Source: Octopus sinensis (Eukaryota). Taken from it: 64,000 nt of DNA. The translations under genes were made by a program, and so were the position numbers. The stretch lies in NCBI RefSeq assembly GCF_006345805.1, contig NC_043013.1, forward strand, positions 6,324,001 through 6,388,000, given 5' to 3'. Under the pieces are notes generated by a model, which was not told the DNA's origin, did no database searches, and worked only from the letters and a program-made list of their open reading frames with translations. Positions 2,652-55,700 of this stretch are shown one piece after another. Every line of letters starts with the position of its first letter. Within the stretch, counting starts at the first letter, position 1.

Positions 2652-2942
2652 GTTTATTTTGAAAATTAATTGAAAACTCACTGAAACAAAGGCAGTGAAT
2701 TTCAATAGCAGTATAGTAACCGAAGAATGAATTACAGGTACCAGCCATGCTTACAGAACCAAATATCTAACCAAAGGTTATATTTACTTAAGTTTCATGA
2801 AAATATTTCTAAGGATGGCCATGTAGTAATCAACAGAAATATGGTGACAAAAAGGTGAAGATGTGCTCAAGGAACAACTATCTGTCCAACCAGAAGTAAA
2901 AATAAAATGCTACATTTACCAAAGAGAAGCGTCTATATTTAC

Positions 2943-3094
2943 CTTGGCTTCATGCAAGCGTCTCCTTTAAGGACGGCATTAAGTATCAGCTGCTGAATAT
3001 CGGTAATGAACAAAGACGGTGACTGAGATGGTGTGTCGGCTTTGGCATCTCCCACATCCAAACTGGGGAACTTGAGGTTAATTTGGGGGTAATT
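2943..3094 (-). CDS. REXO5: Internal coding exon of a REXO5-like RNA exonuclease (N-terminal conserved region)
   Basis: Flanked by gtgcag and AG/gtaaat. The 152-nt open frame reads NYPQINLKFPSLDVGDAKADTPSQSPSLFITDIQQLILNAVLKGDACMKP, which resembles the LFxTDIQxLLxxALLG..P.WC motif of REXO5/NEF-sp proteins as recalled; no search was run. Confidence 0.7.
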
Positions 3095-3441
3095 CTGCAC
3101 AGCAACATGTGGTTACATGCAAAAGAGAATAACAAGAAAAATAACAATACAAACACTGTCAACTGTCAAAACAGTTGCACATAAAGAAAGAAAAACATTA
3201 GCAGTTTGATAATATTCCTGTCATGGAAACCTCAATATCAGCAATTCCAAACATGGGGACCTGCAAACCCTTGGAGGCCTTCAACGTAAATATAGCTTTG
3301 GGGTCAAGGTCTATGAGCTGTATTTAAAATCATAAAAGGGTGGCAGTGTAGATAAACCCTTTAGCATTCAAACTATTGTCAAATGTAATGCTTATTTATT
3401 CACAATGCTTTGAATTAATCACGCATTATTTTATGGTTTCA

Positions 3442-10470: not shown

Positions 10471-11751
10471 AGTGATGAGGAAACAAAGTCGATGTAGTCA
10501 GACTTGTGTAGGTATCCTTACATACATACACACACACATAATACATACATACATACATACATACATACATACACGATGGGCTTCCACTGTTTCCGTTTAC
10601 CAAATCCACTTAAAGGTAAATGGCCGACCTGGGGCTATAGTAAAAGACACAGCAGTTCCTTCATTATTATATATATATATATATATATTTTTTTTTTCTT
10701 TGATAACAGAAGTGGAAGCAATAGAGAGAGAGAGAGAGAGAAAGAGTGAGTGAGTGGAAAGGGACGATGAAGTGAGGTACAAGATTACAGACAAGATTCG
10801 ATTCGATTCGATCCGGCAACCCCTGTGCATGTTTAAAAAACAATGAGACAACGTAGTAAAACACAAATTTTACTTACAACCAGAGGGAGTGAGTGTGTCG
10901 GCCATGGATACATTAAACTAAATGTAACTGGGAACGAACCACCGATCCTTCGGTATCCGACTGACTCGGCCATTCGTAGTTCACTGATGTTGATGTTGTT
11001 GTTTGTAGTGGTGGTGGTGGTGGTGTTGACGGTGGTGGTGGTGGAGGTGGTGGTAGTGGTGTTGGTGGTGGTGGTGGTGGCGGTGGTGACGGTGGTGGAG
11101 GCAGCAGCGGCGGCCGATATAGAGGAAGTGTTAGTTTTGTTGCACATCACGTTAGTATTGTTGTTGCTGTTGTCTGCCGTGTCATGACTACTGCGATGGT
11201 GATGGCGATGGTGGTGAAAGAGTTTGTATTACAGTTGAAGTGTGGTTGCTGTTGTTATTGTTGTTAAGGAAGGGGAAAGGGAAGAGGCGAAGGAGAAGGA
11301 GGAAGAGGAACGCGGTCGTCACGGCTTCGGGCAGCACGAGCGGAGGAGTTGAATAAACGAAACGTTCGCTCGGCGCTCCTTAGTCGTGACCACCTCGTCT
11401 TTGTTGCAGGCAGACAATTTTACTCTGGTGGACCTTCATAACCAGTCAATGTTTGAAAAATCCTATTACATTTTTTATATTTAAATATTGTCGGGAATTG
11501 TATTTAAAAAATCGTTAAAATATTTTGTGTACAGAAGAAGTATAAACGATCTCTTCTTGTAGATGAATTTTAATAACAAATCTCATATGGACCCCACTCC
11601 ACAAGGGTCGTATGACCCCCGTTTAGAATCACTGCTGTAGATTAAGCTCGAAGTCAACTCTGACCGAACGGACTGATCATCAAAGCACGAAGAACTGAGG
11701 GTATGTTATGTTCAAGGAAGAGGTACAGCAAAGAGACACCCTACACCTATT

Positions 11752-12754: not shown

Positions 12755-14550
12755 CATCATCGTTTAACGTCCGTTGTCCATGCTGGCATGGGTTGGACGG
12801 TTTGATCAGAGCTGGTAAGCTGCATCAAACTCCAGTCTGATTTGGCATGGTTTCTAAGGCTGGATGCCATTCCTAATGCCAACCACTTTACCGCCACGAG
12901 TGCTTTTCACCACTAGATGAGCAGTCTTAACACTTCTGCTGCGGAGTACAGGTCTTCTTGAGTACAGCAAGGCGCCAGGCATTTCGATCCCCTGAAAGGT
13001 TCAGCGCCCTGAGGTCATTCTTCAGTACTTCCTCCGATGCCTTCCTGGGTCTGCAATTTCCACGTGTTCCATCTACTTTGAGAGATCGGTGCTTCTTTAT
13101 GGCATCCATCTGCATAACCTGACCAAACTAGCGTAGTCTTCTCTCTTGCACACTAATTCCTCTTATGCGTAACTTTTCTCTCAAAACACTAGTACTCTGT
13201 CGAACATGTACACTTACATTACACATCCAGCGGAGCATACCAGCCTCATTCCTTTCTAACCTTCGCATGTCCTCTGCATTTAGGGCCCACGTCTCACTAC
13301 CATGTAGAAGTGCTGTCCATACACATGCATCACACAATCTTCCTTTCACTCGGAAAGAGAAGCTTTTCGTGGCCAACAGAAGTAACAGCTCTGAATTTCC
13401 TTCATCCTATTCTTATTCTAGCTATCACACTCTCCGTGCATCCTCCCCCGCTACTAATTTGGTACCCTGGGTAGCAGAAATTATCGACTACCTCTAATGA
13501 GACCCCAGGGTATTTGAGAGAATCAATTTCCTGAGTCTCTAAAGTTTTTCTGGATCCTGTGCATTTCCACATACGAAAACCATCTTCTCTGATAACCTTC
13601 TTATTAATTGACCACACCTCTTGTGTGTCCATAGCTCACACTGGGTACACTGTATGAAGTCCCTGCCTACACCTTTCCTACAAATCAAATAGTACCACCT
13701 ATCTGAGTGGGGTAGGGTCCTGTCAGTTTTCTTGCTTACGAGGACCTTAGTTTTTGCTAAGTTAACCTTAAGGCCCTTAAATTCCAAGTTTTGCTTCCAC
13801 ACCTGGAATTTCTCGTCAGGCTCAGATATAGAATCCGCTATGAAGGTAAGATCATGAGCATATAGTAGCTCCCCAGGGCCCACCGGTCTTGAATTCTTCT
13901 GTTGTGGCCTGGCAGACAGTGATGAAAAGGAGGGGACTAAGGACTGAGTCTTGATGGACCCCTACCCTGTACACCAAACTCTTCACTGTACTCATAGTAA
14001 ACTCTCACCTTACTAACAGTGACTTTGTACATGGCCTGTACAGCTTTCACCAGCCACTCGTCAATCCCTAGCCCCCTCGGAGCCCACCATATCACACAGC
14101 GGGGCACTCTATCAGAGGCTTTTCCTAGATTAACGAATGTTATGTATAATGGTTTATTCTTAGCTAAGTACTTCTCTTGCGGTTACCTGACGATGAAATA
14201 GTGCCAGAAATGTTTTCCTTTTCCCTGGACGAAGCCGAACTGCATTTTGTCTCGCCTAATTCTTCTCCTAATTAATTGGACTAAAACTCTCTCCATTATT
14301 TCCATCACCTGGTCCAGGAGTTTGATGCCTCTATAATTGCTTCTATCTAAAGCATCACCCTTACTCTTGTAGCAGCTAACAATTATGTTACTACGCCAGT
14401 CATTGGGGACTACACCTTCCTGAATGACCGGATCATCTATGCGGGTGACTAACCCGTATCCTACTTCACTGGATACTTTGAGCATCTCGGCTGTGATTCC
14501 GGATGGACTAGGGGCTTTCTCGGTTTTCATGTTTTTAATTGCCTTATCTA
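12755..14550 (-). mobile_element. 5'-truncated, frameshifted RTE-clade LINE (RT domain, PHD-like insert, C-terminus, 3' UTR with (GAT)n tail)
   Basis: ORFs read KAPSPSGITAEMLK...NYRGIKLL...QFGFV, ELLYAHDL (YADD motif), and DACVWTALLHGSETW...RRLERNEAGMLRWMC. Confidence 0.9.
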
Positions 14551-26844: not shown

Positions 26845-27217
26845 GGTACTACTTGAGAACAGTGGTCCCGGTGCGCGCACTCGCGTAGTCGCGCATCCGC
26901 TCTTGCTAGTTGTGACTAGTCGATCCTACGACTACTAGCAAAGTAAATAAAACACAAAATAAATAATTTTTTTACACAAAATAAATAAATAAGGAAACAC
27001 AAAGTAAATAATTTTTTAAACAAAGTAAATAAAACAAAAAATAAATAATTTTTGTTAAACAAAATAAATAAAACACAAAAAAAACAAGTAATTAATTTTT
27101 TAAACAAAGTAAAAAAATACAAAAAAACAAAGTAAGGATCGACTAGTCATGACTAGCTGGCGCGGGTGCGCGAGTACGCGAGTGCGCGCACCGGGACCAC
27201 TGTTCTCAAGTCGTGCC
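26845..27217. mobile_element. Non-autonomous foldback element with 77-bp CpG-rich TIRs
   Basis: 26851-26927 is the reverse complement of 27135-27211 (first 37 nt perfect). The interior is A-rich and tandemly repetitive; the right end is followed by TTAA. Confidence 0.75.
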
Positions 27218-27369
27218 TTAAAAAGTTGCATGAAATATATAATTAAAACTTAGAAATAAATATTCTTAAAATTCCGGGAGAGTGTCTATCTAAGGGAAAT
27301 AACCGGAGTGGCGCCCGGTGAAAGCGAGATAAGTCCTGGAAACTGACGGAGGAAAAATTATCTCCAAAC

Positions 27370-28848
27370 ATGAACCGAAATGATGGAAGCGAACTGGTTA
27401 TTGGTGATCGTATCGAATGTGATGATTATTTTGGGACGATAAAATATATAGGAGAAGTTGACGCGATGGAAGGTGTTTGGTTTGGCATTGATTGGGATGA
27501 AATTCATCGGGGAAAACATGACGGTAGCTATAAAGGTAGGCGTTACTTTCAAGCAGGACATCCTAAATCTGGTTCGTTTATTAAACCAATAAAGGCTAAA
27601 TTGGGACAATCTTTCCCTGAGGCTTACGTCTGTAAAGTTAAAGATGTTATTGATGTGCCTTCAAGAATTTTGATTCTCAATAATCATGCAATCTATGGAC
27701 TTGGTTCCCAGGAAGTGACCAGTCAGTTTTCGGCGATTGCGTCAAAAATAACAGAACTAGATCTTTCTGGTAATTTGTTGAAGAACTGGACTCAAGTTGC
27801 TGAAATTACTAACTTAATTCCTAATCTGTTGAAGTTAAATGTAAGTAATAACCGTTTAATAATTCCTGAACACGCGGAAAACTTGTCAAAATCTTTTGCC
27901 AAAGTAGAAGATCTGGTTTTAAACCGAATGAACTACGACTGGGCCAACATTTTATCTGCTGCGTCGATGTTTCCGTCCCTTCGAGGTTTGTACGTGTGTT
28001 TTAATAATTTGGAAAAATTGGATGATTCCACGGGGAAATTGACAAACCTGAAATTTCTCTCATTAATAGACAATCGCTTAAGTGACTGGAACGAACTTTT
28101 AAAACTTGGTCAACTTCCTCAATTGAGCACACTTTATGTAAGTAACAATCAACTGACAGCTGTCTCCTTCAATGACGTACCTTTGGAAGACGGCGAGAAA
28201 ACCACATATTTTCCTTCTCTGAAGTGTTTAGATTTAAGCAGCAACCTCATCGATAACCTGTCATCAATCGATGAGCTTAGTAAATTAGCCAACCTTGCCG
28301 AGTTTTCTTTCCTTCATAATCCAGCAGCAGATATAGATGAGGACAAACTATTTAATTTGATAATTGCCAAAATTGGCAGTTTAAAAAAATATTCAAAAGC
28401 CGAATTCCTTGTCGAAGAACGGAAAAGTGCTGAAATATTTTATCTTCGCATGGTTGAGAAACTGGCATTAGAGAAAAATATCAGTGAAGAAGACACAGCT
28501 AAAACATGTTCAAGATACAAAGAACTGGTAAAGTTGTATGGACATGCAAGTCCTGAATCATTAATAACCAAGACAACTGTTCTACGAGATAAATTAATTG
28601 CAGTTGACATTGAAACTGTTAATATTCCTGATAAAGTGTTCAAGAACAAGAAATTATCTCCAACCATGACCATTCTAAAACTGAAGTTACTTGTACAAAA
28701 ACTCTTTAAAATTCAAGAAATAACTAACCTAGAATTATCTTATATCAGTAAAAACAATTCTCAATTGAAAGTTCACTTAGAGAATGATTTGCATGAACTG
28801 TCGTTTTACAGTATAGAAAATGGTGATAATCTCGTTGCAAAATGGTAA
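27370..28848 (+). CDS. TBCE: Intronless TBCE-like protein (CAP-Gly, LRRs, UBL), 492 aa; copy A
   Basis: CAP-Gly motif GVWFGIDWD..RGKHDG, about 8 LRRs, EERKSAEIFY cap, and C-terminal UBL ending SFYSIENGDNLVAKW. ORF is intact; ATTAAA near 28934. Paralog rather than confirmed ortholog. Confidence 0.9.
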   Translation: MNRNDGSELVIGDRIECDDYFGTIKYIGEVDAMEGVWFGIDWDEIHRGKHDGSYKGRRYFQAGHPKSGSFIKPIKAKLGQSFPEAYVCKVKDVIDVPSRILILNNHAIYGLGSQEVTSQFSAIASKITELDLSGNLLKNWTQVAEITNLIPNLLKLNVSNNRLIIPEHAENLSKSFAKVEDLVLNRMNYDWANILSAASMFPSLRGLYVCFNNLEKLDDSTGKLTNLKFLSLIDNRLSDWNELLKLGQLPQLSTLYVSNNQLTAVSFNDVPLEDGEKTTYFPSLKCLDLSSNLIDNLSSIDELSKLANLAEFSFLHNPAADIDEDKLFNLIIAKIGSLKKYSKAEFLVEERKSAEIFYLRMVEKLALEKNISEEDTAKTCSRYKELVKLYGHASPESLITKTTVLRDKLIAVDIETVNIPDKVFKNKKLSPTMTILKLKLLVQKLFKIQEITNLELSYISKNNSQLKVHLENDLHELSFYSIENGDNLVAKW

Positions 28849-30059
28849 TTTATGCTTTACTTCATTCCTGTCTATGATAACTTTAAACCGGCAACTATTG
28901 TGTTTTGTAAAATATTTCCTGCATGAACTTTTATTAAAAGTGTGAGACACTTCAGTTTTTTTTCTTTTTTTTGTTTTAGTATTTTAGTTTTGTTTTCACC
29001 ATGAAAGCTAAGCTCATGCTGGAGTCCTTCTTTCAGAACTGTAATCATGTTTATGTTTGTCTCGCTCTCTCTGTACTTGACAACTAGTGTTGGTCTGTTT
29101 CCATACTTGTAACTTAGCGGTTCAGCAAAAAGTGCCCGATGTAATAAGTACTAGACTTAAAAATTCACACTGGGGTCGGTTTGATTGACTTAACCCTTTA
29201 TGATAGTACCCCTGCATGGCTGTAGATAATGACTGAAACAAGTAAAATGAACTCATTTCACGTTGCTCCAGCCTACTCAGCTGGTAAAAATGAGTAATCC
29301 TGCGATGGACCGGCGTCCCATCCAGGTGGGGAATTTCTACGCCACTGAAACTGGGAAACCAGCCCTTATGAGCCTGGCATGGCTCGAGAAGAAGGAAAGA
29401 TGCCCTTCCTGTCACCAGTCCTCACTTGTTTCCAAGCTAAGTAATATTTTACAGTTGTCAGACATGTTTTGATACAAGATTGGAAATGAGAGTTGTAAAC
29501 AAGCATCACTGTCATACAAGCAGTGTTGCTCATTCCCTGTCTTTCATGAAAAAAAACCCAGAAATATTTGCACATGCGGAAATATTACTTTGCTTGGAAA
29601 CATGTATGGGTTGGTGATAAGGTGGACATCTCGTGACGAGAAATTCTTATTATTTGAAAGGGGACAAGCTGGCAGAGTCATTAACATGCCAGACAAAATG
29701 CTTAGAAGCATTCCATCTGTCTTTAGGTTCAAATGCTACCAAGGTTGATTTTATCTTTCATCCTTTTGGGAGATGAGGAAGCATGAAATAAATACCAGTT
29801 GAGCATGAGTGTTGATGTAATTGACTAACTCCTTCTACAAGAAATTTCGGGACTTATGCTTGTAGAAGTACGGATTATTTGAGAGAGAAGTGGTTTACAG
29901 AATCAGTGGAGTATTAGACAAAATGTCTTGTAATTAAATACTTTACATCTGATTTCAAAACCCACCAAACTGAAGTTGATCTTTAATCCATGCAGTTAAT
30001 AAAATATACACCAATCATGTAACAGATACTATTTAACCCTTTCGTTACCATTCACTGCC

Positions 30060-38473: not shown

Positions 38474-41218
38474 TTACCACTTTGCAATTAAACTATCGCC
38501 ATTTTCTATGCTGTAATGAGACAGTGGCTTAAAATCATCGTCTAATTCAACTTTTACTTCAGGATTTTCTCTGCTGATATAAGATAGTTTTAGATTAGTC
38601 ATTTCCTGAATTTTAAAGAGTTTTTGTACAAGTGACTTCAGTTTTAGAATGGTTATGTCTGGAGACAATTTCTTGTTCTTCAATACTTTATCAGGAATAT
38701 TATCAGTTTGGATATCAACAGCAATTAATTTATCTCGTAGCAGAATTGTTTTAGTTATCAATGATTGTGGACTCGCATGTCCATATTTCTTCACCAGTTC
38801 TTTGTACCTTGAACAGGTTTTAGCTGTGTCTTCTTCACCAATATTTTTTTCTAATGCCTCCCTCTCAACCATATCTAGATAATATACTTCAGCATTTTTC
38901 CTTTCTTCATCACGAATAAGGGTTTTATCATATTTTTTTAAACTGCCAATTTTACCAACGGTAATATAAAATAGTTTGTCCTTATATACAGCTCCCAATG
39001 GGTTATTTGCTAAAATAAGCTCAGTCAGGTTGGCCAGTTTGCTAAGCTCATCGATTGATGACCGGTTATTGATGTCATTCTTGTTTAAACTTAGACATTC
39101 AAGAGAACGAAAATGTGATGTTTTCTTGCCATCTTCCAAAGATACGTCATTAAAAGAGACGGATGTCAATTGATTGTTATTTACGTAAAGTGTGCTCAAC
39201 TGAGGAAGCTGACCAAATTTTAAAAGTTCATTTTCATCACTAATACGATTGTTTGACAATGAGAGGAATTTTAGCTTTGTCAATTTTCCTGTGGAATCAA
39301 TAAATGTTTCCAAATTATTGAAACTTGCATACAAACGTTGAAGTGATGGAAACATTGATGTAACAGATAAAATGTTAGCCCAGTTATAGTCCATCCTGTT
39401 CAGAATAAGTTCTTCTACATTTGTAAAAGATTTTGCAAACATTTCTACATTTTCAGGAATTATCAAACGGTTACTACTTACATTTAATAGTATTAGATTA
39501 GGAATAATGTTAGCAATTTCCACAACTTGAGTCCAACTCTTCAACAGGTTAGTAGAAAGATCTAGTTCTGTTAATTTTGAGGCAATTGACAAAAACTGAC
39601 TGGTCACTTCCTGGGAACCAAGACCATAAATTCCATAATTATTGAGAATCAGAATTCTTGGAGGCATAATTAAAACATCTTTAGCTTTACAGGCATAAGC
39701 ATCAGGAAAAGACTGTCCGAGGTTAATGTGAAGTGGGTTAATAAAGGAACCAGATTTAGGATGGCTTGCTTGATAATAACACCTACCTTTATAGCTACCG
39801 TCATGTTTTCCCCGATGAATTTCATCCCAGTCAATGCCAAACCAAATACCTTCCATTGTGTCAACTTCTCCTATATATTTTATCGTCCCAAAACAATTCT
39901 CACTTTCAATACGATCACCAATAACCAGTTTGCTTCCATCATTTCGGTTCATATCTGGAAATAATTTCTTGTTTCTGATCATTTCTTCTGGAATATCACC
40001 ATCTGTTAAATGACTTTGGAGGGAATGCTTTTCAGGATATTCATAACCATATTTCTGTCCTAGTTCTTTGTACCTTGAACACGTTTTAGTTAAGTCTTCT
40101 TCACTGATATTTTTCTCTAATGCCTGTTTCTCAATCATGCGAAGATAAAATATTTCAGCATCTTTCTGTTTTTCATCATGGATAATAGTTTTTGCATACT
40201 TTTTTAAACTGCCAATTTTGGCAATTATCAAATTAAACAGTTTGTCCTCATCTATATCTGCTGTTGGATTATGAAGGAAAGAAAACTCGGTAAGGTTGGC
40301 TAATTTACTAAGCTCATCAATTGATGACAGGTTATCGATGAGGTTGCTGCTTAAATCTAAACACTTTAGAGAAGGAAAATATGTGGTTTTCTCACCGTCT
40401 TCCAAAGGTACGTCATTGAAGGAGACGGCTGTCAGTTGATTGTTATTTACATAAAGTGTGCTCAATTGAGGAAGTTGACCAAGTTTTAAAAGTTCGTTCC
40501 AGTCACTTAAGCGATTGTCTATTAATGAGAGAAATTTCAGGTTTGTCAATTTCCCCGTGGAATCAGCCAATTTTTCCAAATTATTAAAACACACGTACAA
40601 ACCTTGAAGGGACGGAAACATCGACGTAGCAGATAAAATGTCGGCCCAGTCGTAGTTCATTCGGTTTAAAACCAGATCTTCTACTTTGGCAAAAGATTTT
40701 GACAAGTTTTCCGCGTGTTCAGGAATTATTAAACGGTTATTACTTACATTTAACTTCAACAGATTAGGAATTAAGTTAGTAATTTCAGCAACTTGAGTCC
40801 AGTTCTTCAACAAATTACCAGAAAGATCTAATTCTGTTATTTTTGAGGCAGTCGCCGAAAACTGACTGGTCACTTCCTGGGAACCAAGACCATAGATTAC
40901 ATAATTATCGAGAATCAAAATTCTTGAGCGCACATCTACGATATCGCCATGTTTACAGACGTAAGCGTCAGGGAAAGATTGTCCCAATTTAGCCTTTATT
41001 GGTTTAATAAACGAACCAGATTTAGGATGTCCTGCTTGAAAGTAACGCCTACCTTTATAGCTACCGTCATGTTTTCCCCGATGAATTTCATCCCAATCAA
41101 TGCCAAACCAAATACCTTCCATTGCTTCAACTTCTCCTATAAATTTTATCGTCCCAAAATAATCATCACATTCGATACGATCACCAATAACCAGTTCGCT
41201 TCCGTCTTTTCTCTTCAT
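38474..41218 (-). CDS. TBCE: Intronless double TBCE-like protein, 914 aa: [CAP-Gly-LRR-truncated UBL] fused to [CAP-Gly-LRR-UBL]; copies B1 and B2
   Basis: Two GKHDG CAP-Gly domains and two LRR arrays in one uninterrupted frame; single complete UBL at the C-terminus. Paralog rather than confirmed ortholog. Confidence 0.9.
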   Translation of the reverse strand: MKRKDGSELVIGDRIECDDYFGTIKFIGEVEAMEGIWFGIDWDEIHRGKHDGSYKGRRYFQAGHPKSGSFIKPIKAKLGQSFPDAYVCKHGDIVDVRSRILILDNYVIYGLGSQEVTSQFSATASKITELDLSGNLLKNWTQVAEITNLIPNLLKLNVSNNRLIIPEHAENLSKSFAKVEDLVLNRMNYDWADILSATSMFPSLQGLYVCFNNLEKLADSTGKLTNLKFLSLIDNRLSDWNELLKLGQLPQLSTLYVNNNQLTAVSFNDVPLEDGEKTTYFPSLKCLDLSSNLIDNLSSIDELSKLANLTEFSFLHNPTADIDEDKLFNLIIAKIGSLKKYAKTIIHDEKQKDAEIFYLRMIEKQALEKNISEEDLTKTCSRYKELGQKYGYEYPEKHSLQSHLTDGDIPEEMIRNKKLFPDMNRNDGSKLVIGDRIESENCFGTIKYIGEVDTMEGIWFGIDWDEIHRGKHDGSYKGRCYYQASHPKSGSFINPLHINLGQSFPDAYACKAKDVLIMPPRILILNNYGIYGLGSQEVTSQFLSIASKLTELDLSTNLLKSWTQVVEIANIIPNLILLNVSSNRLIIPENVEMFAKSFTNVEELILNRMDYNWANILSVTSMFPSLQRLYASFNNLETFIDSTGKLTKLKFLSLSNNRISDENELLKFGQLPQLSTLYVNNNQLTSVSFNDVSLEDGKKTSHFRSLECLSLNKNDINNRSSIDELSKLANLTELILANNPLGAVYKDKLFYITVGKIGSLKKYDKTLIRDEERKNAEVYYLDMVEREALEKNIGEEDTAKTCSRYKELVKKYGHASPQSLITKTILLRDKLIAVDIQTDNIPDKVLKNKKLSPDITILKLKSLVQKLFKIQEMTNLKLSYISRENPEVKVELDDDFKPLSHYSIENGDSLIAKW

Positions 41219-41299
41219 GTTTGGAGATAGTTTTTCCTCCGTCAGTTTCTAAGAAATTATCTCGCTTCCACTGGAAACTATGAGAGTGATTTCCCTTAG

Positions 41300-41884: not shown

Positions 41885-43380
41885 ACACACTTATTCTTTT
41901 ACTTGTTTCTGTCGTTTTGATTGTGGCCATGCTGGAGCACCGCCTTTAGTCGAACAAATCGCCCCCCTGGATTTAGTCTTTGTAAGCCTGGTACTTATTC
42001 TATCGGACGCTTTTGCCGAACCACTAGCTTATGGGGACGTAAGCACACCAAGATCGATTTTTCAAGCGATGGGGTGCGCGCGCGCGTGTGTGTGTGTGTG
42101 TTCAATTACATCAAGGATATAAAATCGAATACAGGTAAAAAAAAACCCGATAGAATAAGTACTAGGCTCACAAAGAATAAGTCCTGGGGTCGATTTGCTC
42201 GACTAAAGGCGGTGCTCCAGCATGGCCACAGTCAAATGACTGAAACAAGTAAAAGTAAGTATTTATATATAATCTTTCAAGTAGGATTTAATGAGGCTGC
42301 GCTGTAAGAAGTTCATTTCCCATCCATATAGTTTTGGACAAATGTCTTCTATTATAGCCCTGGGTTGATCAAAGGTTTGAGACTGGTAGCCGTTGTGTGT
42401 GCGTGTGTATAGGGGGGGGGTGTTACTGTCTTCTTGCCTTGACATTGTGTGACAGTTGTAAACAAGTGTCATTCTCATGCAAGCTGTGTCCTTTGATTTC
42501 AGTCTGGCCATGGGAAACCTCATTTGGGAAAAAATGAGAGTTGGCCACAGGGAGGACGGTAGAAAAATCTGCTTCACCAAATTCTGTCAAACTCATGTAA
42601 GCAGCTGGGAAAAGGGAACATTAAAATGATGGTGATGATGATGACGACGGCGACGACGCTAATGATGGTGATGATGATGATGATGACGACGGCGACGACG
42701 CTAATGATGGTGATGATGATATTTCGCTGCTAAAATAGGTCATGAGAATTTTATTGAACATGGCCTTCACATTTATCTTAAACGTGTATAAATTTTGAGA
42801 TTAGATTAGGCCGTCCATATTTCTCTGATAACTCAGTAGATTTTTTTCATTTGAATAACATTCGCCGCGTGTTATTAATTTTATTGTTGATATATAAATA
42901 AAAGCCCCTCTTATCGAAGTTGAAACTGATAACAGAATTGCGAGGACTGTTCCACTGTGACATAAACTTATTTATATGAGAAATTAACAATGTTGAATTA
43001 ACATTCAATAAAATGCAAATTTATACTTTTGTTACGTTTTTACTATTATACCCATCATAAGTAAGTTGGAAAAATTCTTAGCATGCTAGACAAAATGTCT
43101 AGCAGCATTTCATCCATCTCTACATTCTGAATTTAAATTCCACTTATGAGAGCGGTTGGGTTTGTTTTCAGTAATCTCGCTTGTGTGAGCAGACGAGTTT
43201 ATTTCAGATATTCTCATTTTAAAAATCATCTCTGACTAATTGTTGAGAGGATGTTGGTGTTGCCTTGGCGGAAGTTTGCGCTCTCTGAGTGCTCTTGTTA
43301 TTATTATTTTTACAATTATTATTATTATTATTACAATTATTATTATTATTATTACAATTATTATTATTATTATTATTATT

Positions 43381-43590: not shown

Positions 43591-43652
43591 ATATTATTAT
43601 TATTATTTTTACAATTATTATTATTATTATTATTATTACAATTAATATTATC

Positions 43653-43852
43653 ATTTCCTCAATTTTATGAAAGCAGAATAATTACCTGTTTAAAGTTATC
43701 ATAGACAGGAATGTATTAAAGCCAGAATTACCATTTTGCAATTAAACTATCGCCATTTTCTAAGCTGTAATGAGACAGTGGCTTTAAATCATCGTCTAAT
43801 TCAACTTTTACTTCAGGATTTTCTCTACTGATATAAGATAGTTTTAAGATTA
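43653..43852 (-). pseudogene. 3' remnant of a further TBCE-like copy (last ~40 codons plus 3' UTR)
   Basis: About 95% identical by eye to 38397-38600; encodes KLSYISRENPEVKVELDDDLKPLSHYSLENGDSLIAKW*. Confidence 0.9.
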
Positions 43853-44512
43853 ATGAAATACAGAGTGGTATAAAAAAGTCCCCGGAATAATTATGGTTAA
43901 TAAAAAAAAACTAACTTATTTACCTGAGTTTTAACATCATCTCCTTCGAAATAATCACCTTGCGCAGCAATACACCGGTCTCAGCGTTCCTGTCACTTCT
44001 GGAATCCGGCCTTGAAGTCGTTTTCCGTAAACGAGTCCAAAACACACACACAAATACATATATACCGAATATATGTATTTGTGTGTGTCCTTGTCTTGAC
44101 ATTGTGTGATAGTTGTAAAGGATTGGTCTTGCTATACAACCAGCATCATTCATTCTTAATATTCTACAAAAGCCACGAGGAGATTGTTTTAAACAGTCAC
44201 CTGAAGAAATGTATCTTGAATGTTTGATAACACAATATGTTAATTATATCATCTTACCAATGTACTACAAGTGTAAAAATGTGTCGAAACACTTGTAGCG
44301 ATTTAAATAAAGAATGTCCTTCAATCCATTTTCTATTATCTATTTATGTAAGCTTTACGGATAGTGTAGAATTTCTGATGTATATCTAGTAGCAAGAATA
44401 TTTCTAGTTTGCTAACATTCAGTAGTCAATAATACGGACAAGCTTTGCATAGCATTCTACTAAACACATAGATATATAGATATATACACAGAAACATATA
44501 TACATGTATAAA

Positions 44513-54519: not shown

Positions 54520-54997
54520 TGTATGTATGTATGTATGCATGCATGTATGTATGTATGTATGTATGTATGTATGTATGTATGTATGTATGTATGTATGTAT
54601 GTATGTATGTATGTATGTATGTATGTATGTCATTATTCAGTTTTATTTCAATATTTCTTGCGAGAGAGTGAGAGAGAGAGAGAGCCGGTTTCTAACCTAG
54701 ATCCAAGATTCCTTCATTGGAAGTTCAACATCAACAACAATGTATTTTTGTATGTATGTATATGTGTAGATTTATGTTTTACTTTATGTATGTATGTATG
54801 TATGTATTATGCATGTATGTATGTATGTATGTATGTATGTATGTATGTATGTATGTATGTATGTATGTATGTATGTATGCATGCATGTATGTATGTATGT
54901 ATGTATGTATGTATGTATGTATGTATGTGTATGTATGTATGTATGTATGTATGTATGTATGCATGCATGTATGTATGTATGTATGCATGTATGTATG

Positions 54998-55028
<31 letters not shown>

Positions 55029-55700
55029 GTATGTATGCATGTATGTATGTATGTATGTGTATGTATGTATGTATGTATGTATGTATGCATGCATGTATGT
55101 ATGTATGCATGTATGTATGTATGTATGTATGTATGTATGTATGCATGTATGCATGTATGTATGTATGTATGTATGTATGCATGTATGCATGTATGTATGT
55201 ATGTATGTGTATGTATGTATGTATGTATGTATGTATGCATGTATGTATGTATGTATATATGTATGCATGTATGTATGTATATATGTATGCATGTATGTAT
55301 GTCATTATTCAGTTTTATTTCAATATTTCTTGCGAGAGAGAGAGACAGAGAGAGAGAGCCGGTTTCTAACCTAGATCCAAGATTCCTTCATTGGAAGTTC
55401 AACATCAACAACAATGTATTTTTGTATGTATATGTGTAGATTTATGTTTTACTTTATGTATGTATGTATGTATGTATGTATGTATGTATGTATGTATGTA
55501 TGTATGCATGCATGTATGTATGTATGTAAGTATGTATGTATGTATGTATATATGTATGTATGTATGTACGTATGTATGTATGTATGTATGTATGCATGCA
55601 CGTATGTATGTATGTATGTATGTATGTATGTAGTATGTATGTATGTATGTATGTATGTATGTATGCATGCACGTATGATTGCATGTATGTATGTATGCGC
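54520..55700. repeat. (ATGT)n arrays with a duplicated ~165-bp unique unit
   Basis: 54626-54790 and 55298-55460 are near-identical and separated by (ATGT)n. Confidence 0.9.

What the first reader, a model, noticed from the sequence alone, without database searches (positions are those of the whole stretch)
27355..28669. 5' leader/start codon is an 18/19-nt copy of the gene's own UBL-coding sequence, and the fusion occurs exactly there
Seen: 27355-27373 AAATTATCTCCAAACATGA versus 28651-28669 AAATTATCTCCAACCATGA, in the same reading frame (KLSPNM vs KLSPTM). The B1 leader carries the same motif (AAACTATCTCCAAACATG). The B1/B2 junction reads DIPEEMIRNKKLFPD-MNRNDG, i.e. UBL sequence up to the Met and then the next N-terminus. 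Inference: this microhomology lets head-to-tail copies fuse in frame. Present-day start codons may themselves be relics of an older fusion whose first unit was lost, giving a fuse/split gene accordion.
Basis: partly seen in the sequence, partly recalled or inferred. Interest (0 to 1): 0.72.

Follow-up and report, generated by a model that had tools for sequence, protein, structure and literature searches.

The report
UBL-derived patch before octopus TBCE start
Just before its start codon, an octopus tubulin-chaperone gene carries a real 15-base copy of its own coding sequence, and it sits at the exact point where two gene copies were joined into one double-length gene; the evidence points to one ancient join, not a repeated fuse-and-split cycle.

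Summary
27355-27373 and 28651-28669 match at 18 of 19 bases, in frame, both ending in ATGA. The motif also lies before the B1 start and at the B1/B2 junction. This is not chance and not a repeat family.

- The genome has no intron-bearing parental TBCE. Gene A, B1 and B2 are its only TBCE units.
- Gene A is the positional orthologue of the single intronless Argonauta gene.
- The 914-aa fusion, with an identical junction, is also present in O. vulgaris and O. bimaculoides, and it is under purifying selection. It is therefore one old, fixed event.
- Argonauta and two other cephalopod assemblies have one unit and no leader motif.
- The copy is only 15 nt plus ATGA. It replaces 9 nt of an old N-terminal coding extension whose ATG is CTG in Octopus.
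- A and B1 exchange sequence by ongoing gene conversion.
- The junction is UBL-type at the one informative position, so only the final bases are shown to have been used.

I could not resolve whether the patch caused the fusion or followed from it. No evidence supports an accordion. This is a new example of known rearrangement types, of modest interest.

The parts
27370..28848 (+). Gene A: intronless single-unit TBCE of 492 aa (CAP-Gly, LRR, UBL). It is the positional orthologue of the single Argonauta gene.
   Evidence: ORF. Pfam CAP_GLY 1e-20, LRR families and Ubiquitin_2. 90% identical to O. bimaculoides TBCE. Synteny with Argonauta's RNase_T neighbour.
27355..27373 (+). Leader patch of gene A: 15 nt (AAATTATCTCCAAAC) copied from UBL-coding DNA, followed by the start ATGA.
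   Evidence: It replaces 9 nt (TGGCAGAAA) that are present in Argonauta.
27279..27354 (+). Older part of the A leader. It is shared with the B1 leader and with Argonauta. CTG at 27343-27345 stands where Argonauta, two other cephalopod assemblies and a gastropod have the ancestral start ATG.
   Evidence: blastn shows A~B1 homology starting at 27279. N-terminal extensions are shown.
28651..28669 (+). Source-type 19-mer in the UBL of gene A (KLSPTM). The Met is the conserved UBL Met (KKLP.[ST]M in other animals).
   Evidence: protein comparison.
39953..41218 (-). Unit B1 of fused gene B (codons 1-422): CAP-Gly and LRR, plus a UBL truncated at its Met. The tail has a 10-codon deletion and diverged rapidly.
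41215..41233 (-). Leader patch of B1 (AAACTATCTCCAAAC plus ATGA).
   Evidence: The B1-specific C at position 4 is shared with O. bimaculoides B1, so this patch predates that speciation.
39949..39967 (-). B1/B2 junction 19-mer (AAATTATTTCCAGATATGA): UBL-derived sequence running into the ATG of unit B2.
   Evidence: It is identical in O. vulgaris and O. bimaculoides.
38474..39952 (-). Unit B2 of fused gene B (codons 423-914): a complete CAP-Gly, LRR and UBL unit with the stop codon.
38653..38671 (-). UBL 19-mer of B2 (AAATTGTCTCCAGACATAA). The Met codon here has become ATA.
43649..43858 (-). Young partial copy (96% identical) of the last 39 codons and 3' UTR of B2, lying 2.4 kb upstream of B1. 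More B2 3' flank follows at 43144..43344. Its 5' break is not at the 19-mer.
   Evidence: It is present in O. vulgaris and absent upstream of O. bimaculoides B.

Best explanation
The locus holds the only TBCE genes of an Octopus genome very close to O. vulgaris.

Inferred history. After the split from Argonauta, the ancestral intronless gene (now gene A) gave rise to a second copy, in inverted orientation about 10 kb away. In that copy a 1.3-kb head-to-tail duplication ran from the start ATG to the conserved UBL Met. It joined ATGA to ATGA in frame and created a CAP-Gly-LRR-(UBL stub)-CAP-Gly-LRR-UBL gene. That gene has stayed fixed and under purifying selection.

The motif. The 'leader' motif is a 15-nt templated copy of the UBL bases that precede that Met. 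It sits directly before the start ATG, inside a former N-terminal coding extension whose own ATG is CTG in Octopus. It comes from the same ATGA-to-ATGA pairing as the fusion. Ongoing gene conversion keeps it alike in A and B1.

My leaning on direction (inferred, not shown). The fusion came first, using ATGA microhomology with selection for the in-frame product. The patch arose later, when a break before a start codon was repaired from the B2 copy. Synthesis ran past the ATG into the junction's UBL-derived bases before end-joining. Conversion then spread the patch.

Shown:
- the copy is real;
- there is a single fusion, shared by three species;
- the outgroups lack both features;
- gene conversion occurs;
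- all units are under selective constraint.

Inferred: the repair mechanism and the order of events.
For: Non-chance copy.

Only three TBCE units in the genome and no intron-bearing parent.

A 914-aa fused gene with an identical junction in O. bimaculoides and O. vulgaris.

A single unit without the motif in Argonauta and two other assemblies.

Gene A is syntenic with the Argonauta gene.

The patch is confined to 15 nt plus ATGA and is flanked by sequence orthologous to Argonauta.

Gene conversion:
- In alignment nt 451-1050, Ow_A differs from Ow_B1 at 13 of 600 sites, but from Ob_A at 38 of 600.
- The O. vulgaris B1 5' end differs from the window's B1 and equals the A type, although the two B genes differ at only 27 of 2745 nt.
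- dS between B2 and A/B1 is 0.25-0.30 in the 5' third and 0.6 in the LRR region, so the region next to the junction also exchanges.

dN/dS between species is 0.24-0.35 for all units and 0.19 for the B1 stub.

The junction has the UBL-type G at position 13.

Tandem duplications of 1 kb and more with junction microhomology, and templated insertions, are documented outcomes of polymerase-theta end joining (PMC7368036, read).
Against: - The order of events is not resolved. A pre-existing patch would equally predict a junction at this spot.
- The argument from position 13 rests on one base.
- Templated insertions usually copy from the immediate vicinity of the break. Here the template is 1.3 kb away or in the paralogue.
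- Conversion has overwritten most of the phylogenetic signal. The claim that B began as a single unit and was then duplicated internally rests on few sites: shared derived bases at alignment positions 1057-1071 and 1321-1322.
- No transcript data were available to show that the 914-aa ORF is made as one protein.
Confidence: 0.55

Rival explanations
1. Patch first. A 15-nt copy of UBL sequence was already in the leader of the ancestral Octopus gene. The resulting 19-nt identity then guided an unequal exchange or template switch that fused two units in frame.
For: - The patch is in both A and B1 leaders in two divergent species, with a B1-specific variant shared across species. It is therefore at least as old as the Ow/Ob split.
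- The junction lies exactly in the 19-mer.
- This history needs no more rearrangements than the fusion-first history.
Against: - The junction is UBL-type at the only informative position, so just the last six bases or fewer are shown to have been used.
- The origin of the patch still needs an unexplained ATGA-primed copying event.
- Conversion can explain the presence of the patch in both leaders.
- No second fusion has formed in three species, although the homology has persisted in Ow and Ov.
Confidence: 0.3
2. Accordion or relic. Present start regions are leftovers of an earlier fused gene whose first unit was deleted, and units are repeatedly gained and lost at the motif.
For: - The upstream frame is open and reads KLSPN-M.
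- A young partial copy of the B2 3' end lies upstream of B1, which shows that the locus still rearranges.
Against: - No homology exists beyond 15 nt plus ATGA.
- The sequence immediately upstream is orthologous to Argonauta's leader and N-terminal extension.
- Only one fusion exists, identical in three species.
- There are no other copies.
- The break point of the 3' fragment is not at the 19-mer.
- This history needs more events than either alternative.
Confidence: 0.07
3. RNA-level origin. Exon-to-exon joining (exon repetition or trans-splicing) in an intron-containing ancestor, followed by retroposition, because both break points lie next to ancestral phase-1 intron positions.
For: In the gastropod Babylonia one phase-1 intron splits codon 7 (G|AC), 2 nt before the residue aligned with the Octopus start. 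Another splits KKLP G|CC ACA ATG, 5 nt before the UBL Met. Under one of two equally plausible local alignments, joining those exon ends reproduces ...CCA A|AC ATG exactly, including the single mismatch.
Against: - All sampled cephalopod TBCE genes are already intronless, including the syntenic Argonauta gene, which lacks the patch. No splicing was therefore available when the patch arose.
- The fit depends on a one-codon alignment choice.
- The coincidence was noticed post hoc. My rough estimate of its chance probability is about 0.02, reasoned from intron spacing and not computed by any tool.
Confidence: 0.04
4. Coincidence or functional convergence, for example a shared translation-start context or a shared KLSP peptide motif.
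For: CAAACATGA and CAACCATGA both resemble good start contexts (my own knowledge of Kozak-type consensus).
Against: - AAATTATCTCC is 11 of 11 identical, including all synonymous positions.
- 0.04 hits are expected against 5 found.
- O. bimaculoides has deleted or mutated the patch without losing the genes, so it is not constrained.
- The UBL ATG is ATA in B2.
Confidence: 0.02

Closest known systems
Microhomology-mediated tandem duplication (polymerase-theta end joining, or replication template switching)
   Same: A head-to-tail duplicate of 1.3 kb, with a junction at a short shared sequence (ATGA, up to 19 nt) and no filler. Outgroups show the unduplicated state. PMC7368036 reports tandem duplications from 1 kb upward with junction homology.
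   Different: This duplication is in frame, fixed, and kept by selection as a double-length gene in at least three species. The enzyme pathway cannot be known from sequence.
Templated insertions at repaired breaks (hallmark of polymerase-theta end joining), or homologous repair completed by end joining
   Same: A 15-nt tract, 14 of 15 identical to another sequence of the same gene, lying directly next to a 4-nt microhomology and replacing 9 nt of the older sequence.
   Different: The template is 1.3 kb away or in the paralogue, not in the immediate vicinity of the break as in most reported cases.
Concerted evolution of inverted paralogues by gene conversion
   Same: A and B1 within a species are more alike than orthologues over a 600-nt block. 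The 5' ends were reshuffled between very close species.
   Different: Conversion is patchy. It stops where the B1 tail diverges and it affects B2 less.
Canonical tubulin-specific chaperone E (TBCE)
   Same: CAP-Gly, LRR and C-terminal UBL in that order. The best hits are all TBCE.
   Different: The cephalopod genes are intronless and about 46 aa shorter between CAP-Gly and LRR. The octopus B gene has two units in tandem, an arrangement not seen among the top 150 representatives.

Membership tests
TBCE | N-terminal CAP-Gly domain | tested here: met
   PF01302 at 1e-20 in A and two copies in B at 1e-40.
TBCE | Central leucine-rich repeats and a C-terminal ubiquitin-like domain | tested here: met
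   LRR_4, LRR_8 and LRR_9 hits. The Ubiquitin_2 hit at the C-terminus is below Pfam's cut-off, but the alignment with TBCE of other animals is end to end.
TBCE | Tubulin-folding cofactor activity | not testable with these tools
These are the only TBCE-like genes in the genome, which suggests they carry the function.
Microhomology-mediated tandem duplication | Head-to-tail copies with a junction at a short shared sequence and no filler | tested here: met
   B1 and B2 abut at ...CCAGAT|ATGAACCGA. ATGA is shared by the start and by the UBL Met.
Microhomology-mediated tandem duplication | The unduplicated state is present in an outgroup | tested here: met
   Argonauta and a further cephalopod assembly (L013) have one unit within +/-10 kb; a third assembly (L012) has one unit on its 4.2-kb contig.
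Templated insertion | A short insertion identical to a nearby template, adjoining a microhomology | tested here: inconclusive
   The tract is 15 nt, 14 of 15 identical to UBL DNA, and abuts ATGA. The template is 1.3 kb away or in the paralogue, whereas reported cases mostly copy from the immediate vicinity.
Gene conversion / concerted evolution | Paralogues within a species more similar than orthologues between species over a block | tested here: met
   13 of 600 differences against 38 of 600 in Ow, and 27 of 600 against 36-42 of 600 in Ob. There are no fixed A/B1 differences shared by both species in nt 451-1050.
Recurrent fuse/split 'accordion' | Different unit numbers or independent junctions among copies, species or alleles | tested here: not met
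   There is one two-unit gene with the same junction in three species and no other copies. Within-species polymorphism was not testable, because only one assembly per species was available.
Retrogene | Intronless copy of a gene that has introns in relatives | tested here: met
   Uninterrupted ORFs in Octopus, Argonauta and two other assemblies. The gastropod gene has at least 13 coding exons over 14 kb.
Retrogene | Poly(A) remnant and target-site duplications | not tested
   Neither was searched for systematically. By eye, no obvious poly(A) follows the end of A/B2 homology at 28913 or 38408.

The most novel reading that the evidence does not exclude
The 15-nt UBL copy in front of the start codon pre-dates the fusion and acts as a built-in docking site. 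It makes in-frame head-to-tail joining of TBCE units (and their loss) recurrent in octopods, so unit number would vary among lineages or individuals that have not been sampled.
Probability: 0.1. Interest if true: 0.6.

Novelty: new member of a known kind. Interest (0 to 1): 0.3.

Why it matters
The locus is a clean natural example of how a few shared bases at two in-frame ATG codons can join two gene copies into one double-length, selectively maintained gene. It also shows how that event, or its precursor, leaves a short footprint in front of a start codon, which gene conversion then keeps alive.

The locus also shows that Octopus has no conventional TBCE. Its only tubulin cofactor E genes are an intronless single unit and a unique tandem double unit. 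That may interest people who work on cephalopod cytoskeleton and neurons.

It does not reveal a new mechanism.

Tried and rejected
1. I looked for homology between the leader and UBL DNA upstream of the 19-mer, using local alignments of four leaders against six UBL or junction segments with shuffles. Nothing exceeded chance. An apparent GAAACTG match is part of the leader shared with Argonauta.

2. I tested whether the 19-mer belongs to a repeat family. It does not.

3. I searched the whole genome for an intron-bearing parent or further copies, using the octopus protein and a gastropod TBCE. Apart from the 3' fragment in this window (43731-43847), only unrelated CAP-Gly and similar weak hits turned up elsewhere.

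4. I searched 1.8 billion representatives for other TBCE-TBCE tandems. The long hits were CAP-Gly arrays or unrelated fusions.

5. I tried to order the duplications from shared derived sites and dS. Conversion between A and B1 has erased the signal over most of the gene, and the unconverted 3' part is too short and too fast-evolving in B1.

6. I considered an RNA-level exon-joining origin, because both break points lie next to ancestral intron sites. I rejected it on timing and synteny.

7. I considered whether B is a retrocopy of an A transcript, because homology is limited to -91..+65. I saw no poly(A) or signal placement to support this, and left it open.

8. An exact-sequence look-up of the window's A protein found nothing, so the O. 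vulgaris A leader could not be read.

9. Literature searches for TBCE in octopus or cephalopods found nothing relevant.

Full report
**What is there**

The window is G000:C17:6324001-6388000 of a 2.7-Gb genome. Two genes are relevant.
- Gene A (27370..28848, +) is an uninterrupted 492-codon ORF.
- Gene B (38474..41218, -) is an uninterrupted 914-codon ORF.

Pfam finds CAP-Gly, leucine-rich repeats and a C-terminal ubiquitin-like domain in A. In B it finds two CAP-Gly and two LRR blocks but one UBL. B consists of two units:
- B1 (codons 1-422), whose UBL stops at its conserved Met;
- B2 (codons 423-914), a complete unit.

The best protein hits are TBCE of O. bimaculoides (90% to A) and a 914-aa 'TBCE-like' protein of O. 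vulgaris (97% to B). B differs from the O. vulgaris gene at 27 of 2745 nt. The window therefore comes from a very close relative of O. vulgaris. I call it Ow, with Ov for O. vulgaris and Ob for O. bimaculoides.

**The observation**

The two 19-mers are as reported: 18 of 19 identical, in frame, both ending in ATGA. At up to 3 mismatches the window holds five copies against 0.04 expected: the A leader, the A UBL, the B1 leader, the B1/B2 junction and the B2 UBL.

The A leader's best local match to its own CDS scores 33. The best of 300 shuffles scores 26. Genome-wide there are 11 sites at up to 1 mismatch. Three are at this locus and the others are scattered. Eleven consecutive bases, including every synonymous position, are identical. 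This is a copy of DNA, not convergence.

1. No intron-bearing parent exists. Searches of the whole genome with the octopus protein and with a gastropod TBCE find only A, B1, B2 and one short 3' fragment in this window.

2. Cephalopod TBCE is intronless. This holds in Octopus, in Argonauta hians and in two unnamed cephalopod-like assemblies. The gastropod Babylonia gene has at least 13 coding exons over 14 kb.

3. Gene A sits at the ancestral locus. Exons of the RNase_T-domain gene that lies upstream of the Argonauta TBCE match the window at 2936-3105 and 10871-10988, in the same order and orientation. B is the derived copy.

4. Ob has the same arrangement: A, and a 914-aa B in inverted orientation about 7 kb away. 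Ov has the same 914-aa B; its A lies outside the fetched locus and was not seen. The junction 19-mer is identical in all three species. Argonauta and the further assembly L013 have one unit within 10 kb either side; the third assembly (L012) is a 4.2-kb contig with one unit.

5. All three units are under purifying selection between Ow and Ob. dN/dS is 0.24-0.35, and 0.19 for the UBL stub of B1. dS between the species is about 0.15.

6. Among the 150 best of 1.8 billion representative proteins, no other TBCE-TBCE tandem appears.

**Anatomy of the leader copy**

The four Octopus leaders read as follows:
- Ow_A: ...CTGACGGAGGAA AAATTATCTCCAAAC ATG
- Ow_B1: the same, with C at position 4
- Ov_B1: the Ow_A 19-mer exactly
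- Ob_A: a 12-nt deletion leaving ...TGAAATCTCCAAAC ATG
- Ob_B1: AAGCAATTTCCAAAC ATG

The patch was therefore present in both genes before the Ow/Ob split. The B1-specific C at position 4 is shared by Ow and Ob. In Ob the patch is decaying, so it is not under constraint. Only the Ow_A leader beats shuffles against its own CDS.

Argonauta, P0003 and P0004 lack the patch. Upstream of the 19-mer there is no similarity to UBL DNA. Instead, the Octopus leader aligns with the Argonauta leader (A1).

Argonauta has an in-frame ATG 21 nt upstream of its annotated start (MSDNWQK-MKRSDDS). Its length and position match the N-termini of P0003 and P0004 (MAS..TM-KRPDGS) and of Babylonia (MAAQDAD-LLRKDGS). 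Octopus has CTG at that place (27343-27345).

The 'leader' is therefore a decayed N-terminal coding extension. The patch is a 15-nt replacement of the 9 nt that precede the second Met in Argonauta (TGGCAGAAA).

**Gene conversion**

In alignment nt 451-1050 the difference counts are:

| Comparison | Differences per 600 sites |
|---|---|
| Ow_A vs Ow_B1 | 13 |
| Ow_A vs Ob_A | 38 |
| Ob_A vs Ob_B1 | 27 |
| A vs B1 across species | 36-42 |

No A/B1 difference in that block is shared by both species.

The first 24 nt of B1 differ between Ow (ATGAAGAGAAAAGAC...) and Ov (ATGAACCGAAATGAT..., equal to Ow_A), although the two B genes are 99% identical.

dS between B2 and A/B1 is 0.25-0.30 in the first 450 nt and 0.6 in the LRR region. 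Exchange therefore also reaches the region next to the junction.

Two consequences follow. The greater similarity of A to B1 cannot be read as duplication order. A patch that arose in one leader would also spread easily to the other.

**The junction**

| Sequence | Bases (15 nt \| ATGA or ATAA) |
|---|---|
| Junction | AAATTATTTCCAGAT\|ATGA |
| B2 UBL | AAATTGTCTCCAGAC\|ATAA |
| A UBL | AAATTATCTCCAACC\|ATGA |
| Leaders | AAA[T/C]TATCTCCAAAC\|ATGA |

The only position that separates leader type (A) from B-type UBL (G) is position 13, and the junction has G. If a leader and a UBL 19-mer recombined, the exchange was resolved within the last six bases. A join that used only ATGA would give the same result.

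The shared GA of the junction and the B2 UBL, plus three shared derived bases at alignment positions 1057-1071, suggest a sequence of events. B first existed as a single unit, diverged from A, and was then duplicated internally. The number of sites is small.

**Mechanism**

Two histories need the same number of rearrangements.

*Fusion first.* An internal tandem duplication from the start ATG to the UBL ATG joined at ATGA, and selection kept the in-frame product. Later a break just before a start codon was repaired from the B2 copy. Synthesis ran 15 nt past the ATG into the junction's UBL-derived bases, and the end was then joined back. Conversion carried the patch to the other leader.

*Patch first.* An ATGA-primed templated insertion created the patch, and the 19-nt identity then guided the duplication.

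In each history one step is a lucky 4-nt pairing and the other step is predicted by the first. Tandem duplications of 1 kb or more with junction homology, and templated insertions, are documented products of polymerase-theta end joining (PMC7368036). In that work the templates lie close to the break.

The UBL-type junction mildly favours fusion first, or at least shows that the patch was not needed. I put fusion first at about 0.45, patch first at 0.30, and the remaining histories together at about 0.25.

**The accordion**

Nothing supports repeated fusing and splitting. There is one junction, identical in three species. There are no extra copies and no triple unit. There is no extended homology that would mark a lost first unit.

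The locus does still rearrange. A 96% copy of the last 39 codons and 3' flank of B2 lies 2.4 kb upstream of B1 (43858..43649 and 43344..43144). It is present in Ov and absent in Ob. Its break point is 56 nt past the 19-mer, so it does not use the motif.

**An unexpected coincidence**

In Babylonia, phase-1 introns split the codon just before the residue aligned with the Octopus start (G|AC), and the codon two before the UBL Met (G|CC ACA ATG). Under one of two equally good local alignments, joining those exon ends would give ...CCA A|AC ATG, which is exactly the leader sequence including its single mismatch. That would suggest an RNA-level join followed by retroposition.

I reject this on timing. 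Argonauta's syntenic gene is already intronless and has no patch. The coincidence was also noticed post hoc; my rough estimate of its chance probability, about 0.02, is reasoned from intron spacing and was not computed by any tool.

**Verdict**

The feature is a real molecular scar tied to a single ancient in-frame tandem fusion of the only TBCE genes of Octopus. It is a new example of known kinds of rearrangement: microhomology-mediated tandem duplication, short templated copy and gene conversion. I found no paper on it. The fused gene is already annotated in public records as 'TBCE-like'. Interest is modest.

Noticed in passing
window 27370-28848 and 38474-41218; L011, L012, L013, L016: TBCE is a single uninterrupted ORF in all cephalopod-like genomes sampled. 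The gastropod Babylonia gene has at least 13 coding exons over 14 kb. Octopus has no other TBCE, so an intronless (retrogene-like) copy appears to have replaced the parent early in cephalopods. The cephalopod proteins also lack about 50-60 residues between CAP-Gly and LRR (gastropod residues ~90-150 have no match).
   Followed up: partly
window 27343-27369; L011 9980-10000: Argonauta's annotated start is probably 7 codons too short, because an in-frame ATG lies 21 nt upstream and matches the N-termini of other cephalopods and a gastropod. Octopus has CTG at that position. The frame from CTG to ATG is open in Ow_A, Ow_B1, Ob_A (12-nt deletion) and Ob_B1, but a 1-nt deletion breaks it in O. vulgaris B1. 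CUG initiation cannot be excluded for A.
   Followed up: partly
L016 518-522, 1500, 13130-13136, 13777: Both octopus break points (start ATG and UBL Met) lie within one or two codons of ancestral phase-1 intron positions seen in Babylonia (G|AC and G|CC ACA ATG). This is probably coincidence.
   Followed up: partly
window 43649-43858 and 43144-43344 (-): A young (96%) partial duplicate of the B2 3' end (last 39 codons, stop, 3' UTR and flank) lies 2.4 kb upstream of B1. It is interrupted by an AAT-rich microsatellite and about 250 nt of other sequence. It is shared with O. vulgaris and absent in O. bimaculoides. Its ORF is intact.
   Followed up: partly
window 2936-3105 and 10871-10988: Exons of an RNase_T-domain gene, conserved with the gene next to the Argonauta TBCE (82% and 66% at amino-acid level). 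They establish synteny.
   Followed up: partly
window 26027-26119/26346-26438, 26845-26927/27135-27217, 26939-27126: Two inverted-repeat pairs (93 nt at 94% and 83 nt at 89%) and a tandem A-rich repeat lie just upstream of the A leader. The nearest arm ends about 60 nt before the A/B1 homology starts. This may be a small transposon insertion next to the promoter.
   Followed up: no
window 38653-38655 (-) and orthologues: The conserved UBL Met is ATA (Ile) in B2 of all three Octopus species. The preceding residue is Asp in both the junction and the B2 UBL, but Thr in A.
   Followed up: partly
window 54523-55374: The 283-codon 'ORF' is a TGTATGTA-type simple repeat (MYVC...), not a gene.
   Followed up: no
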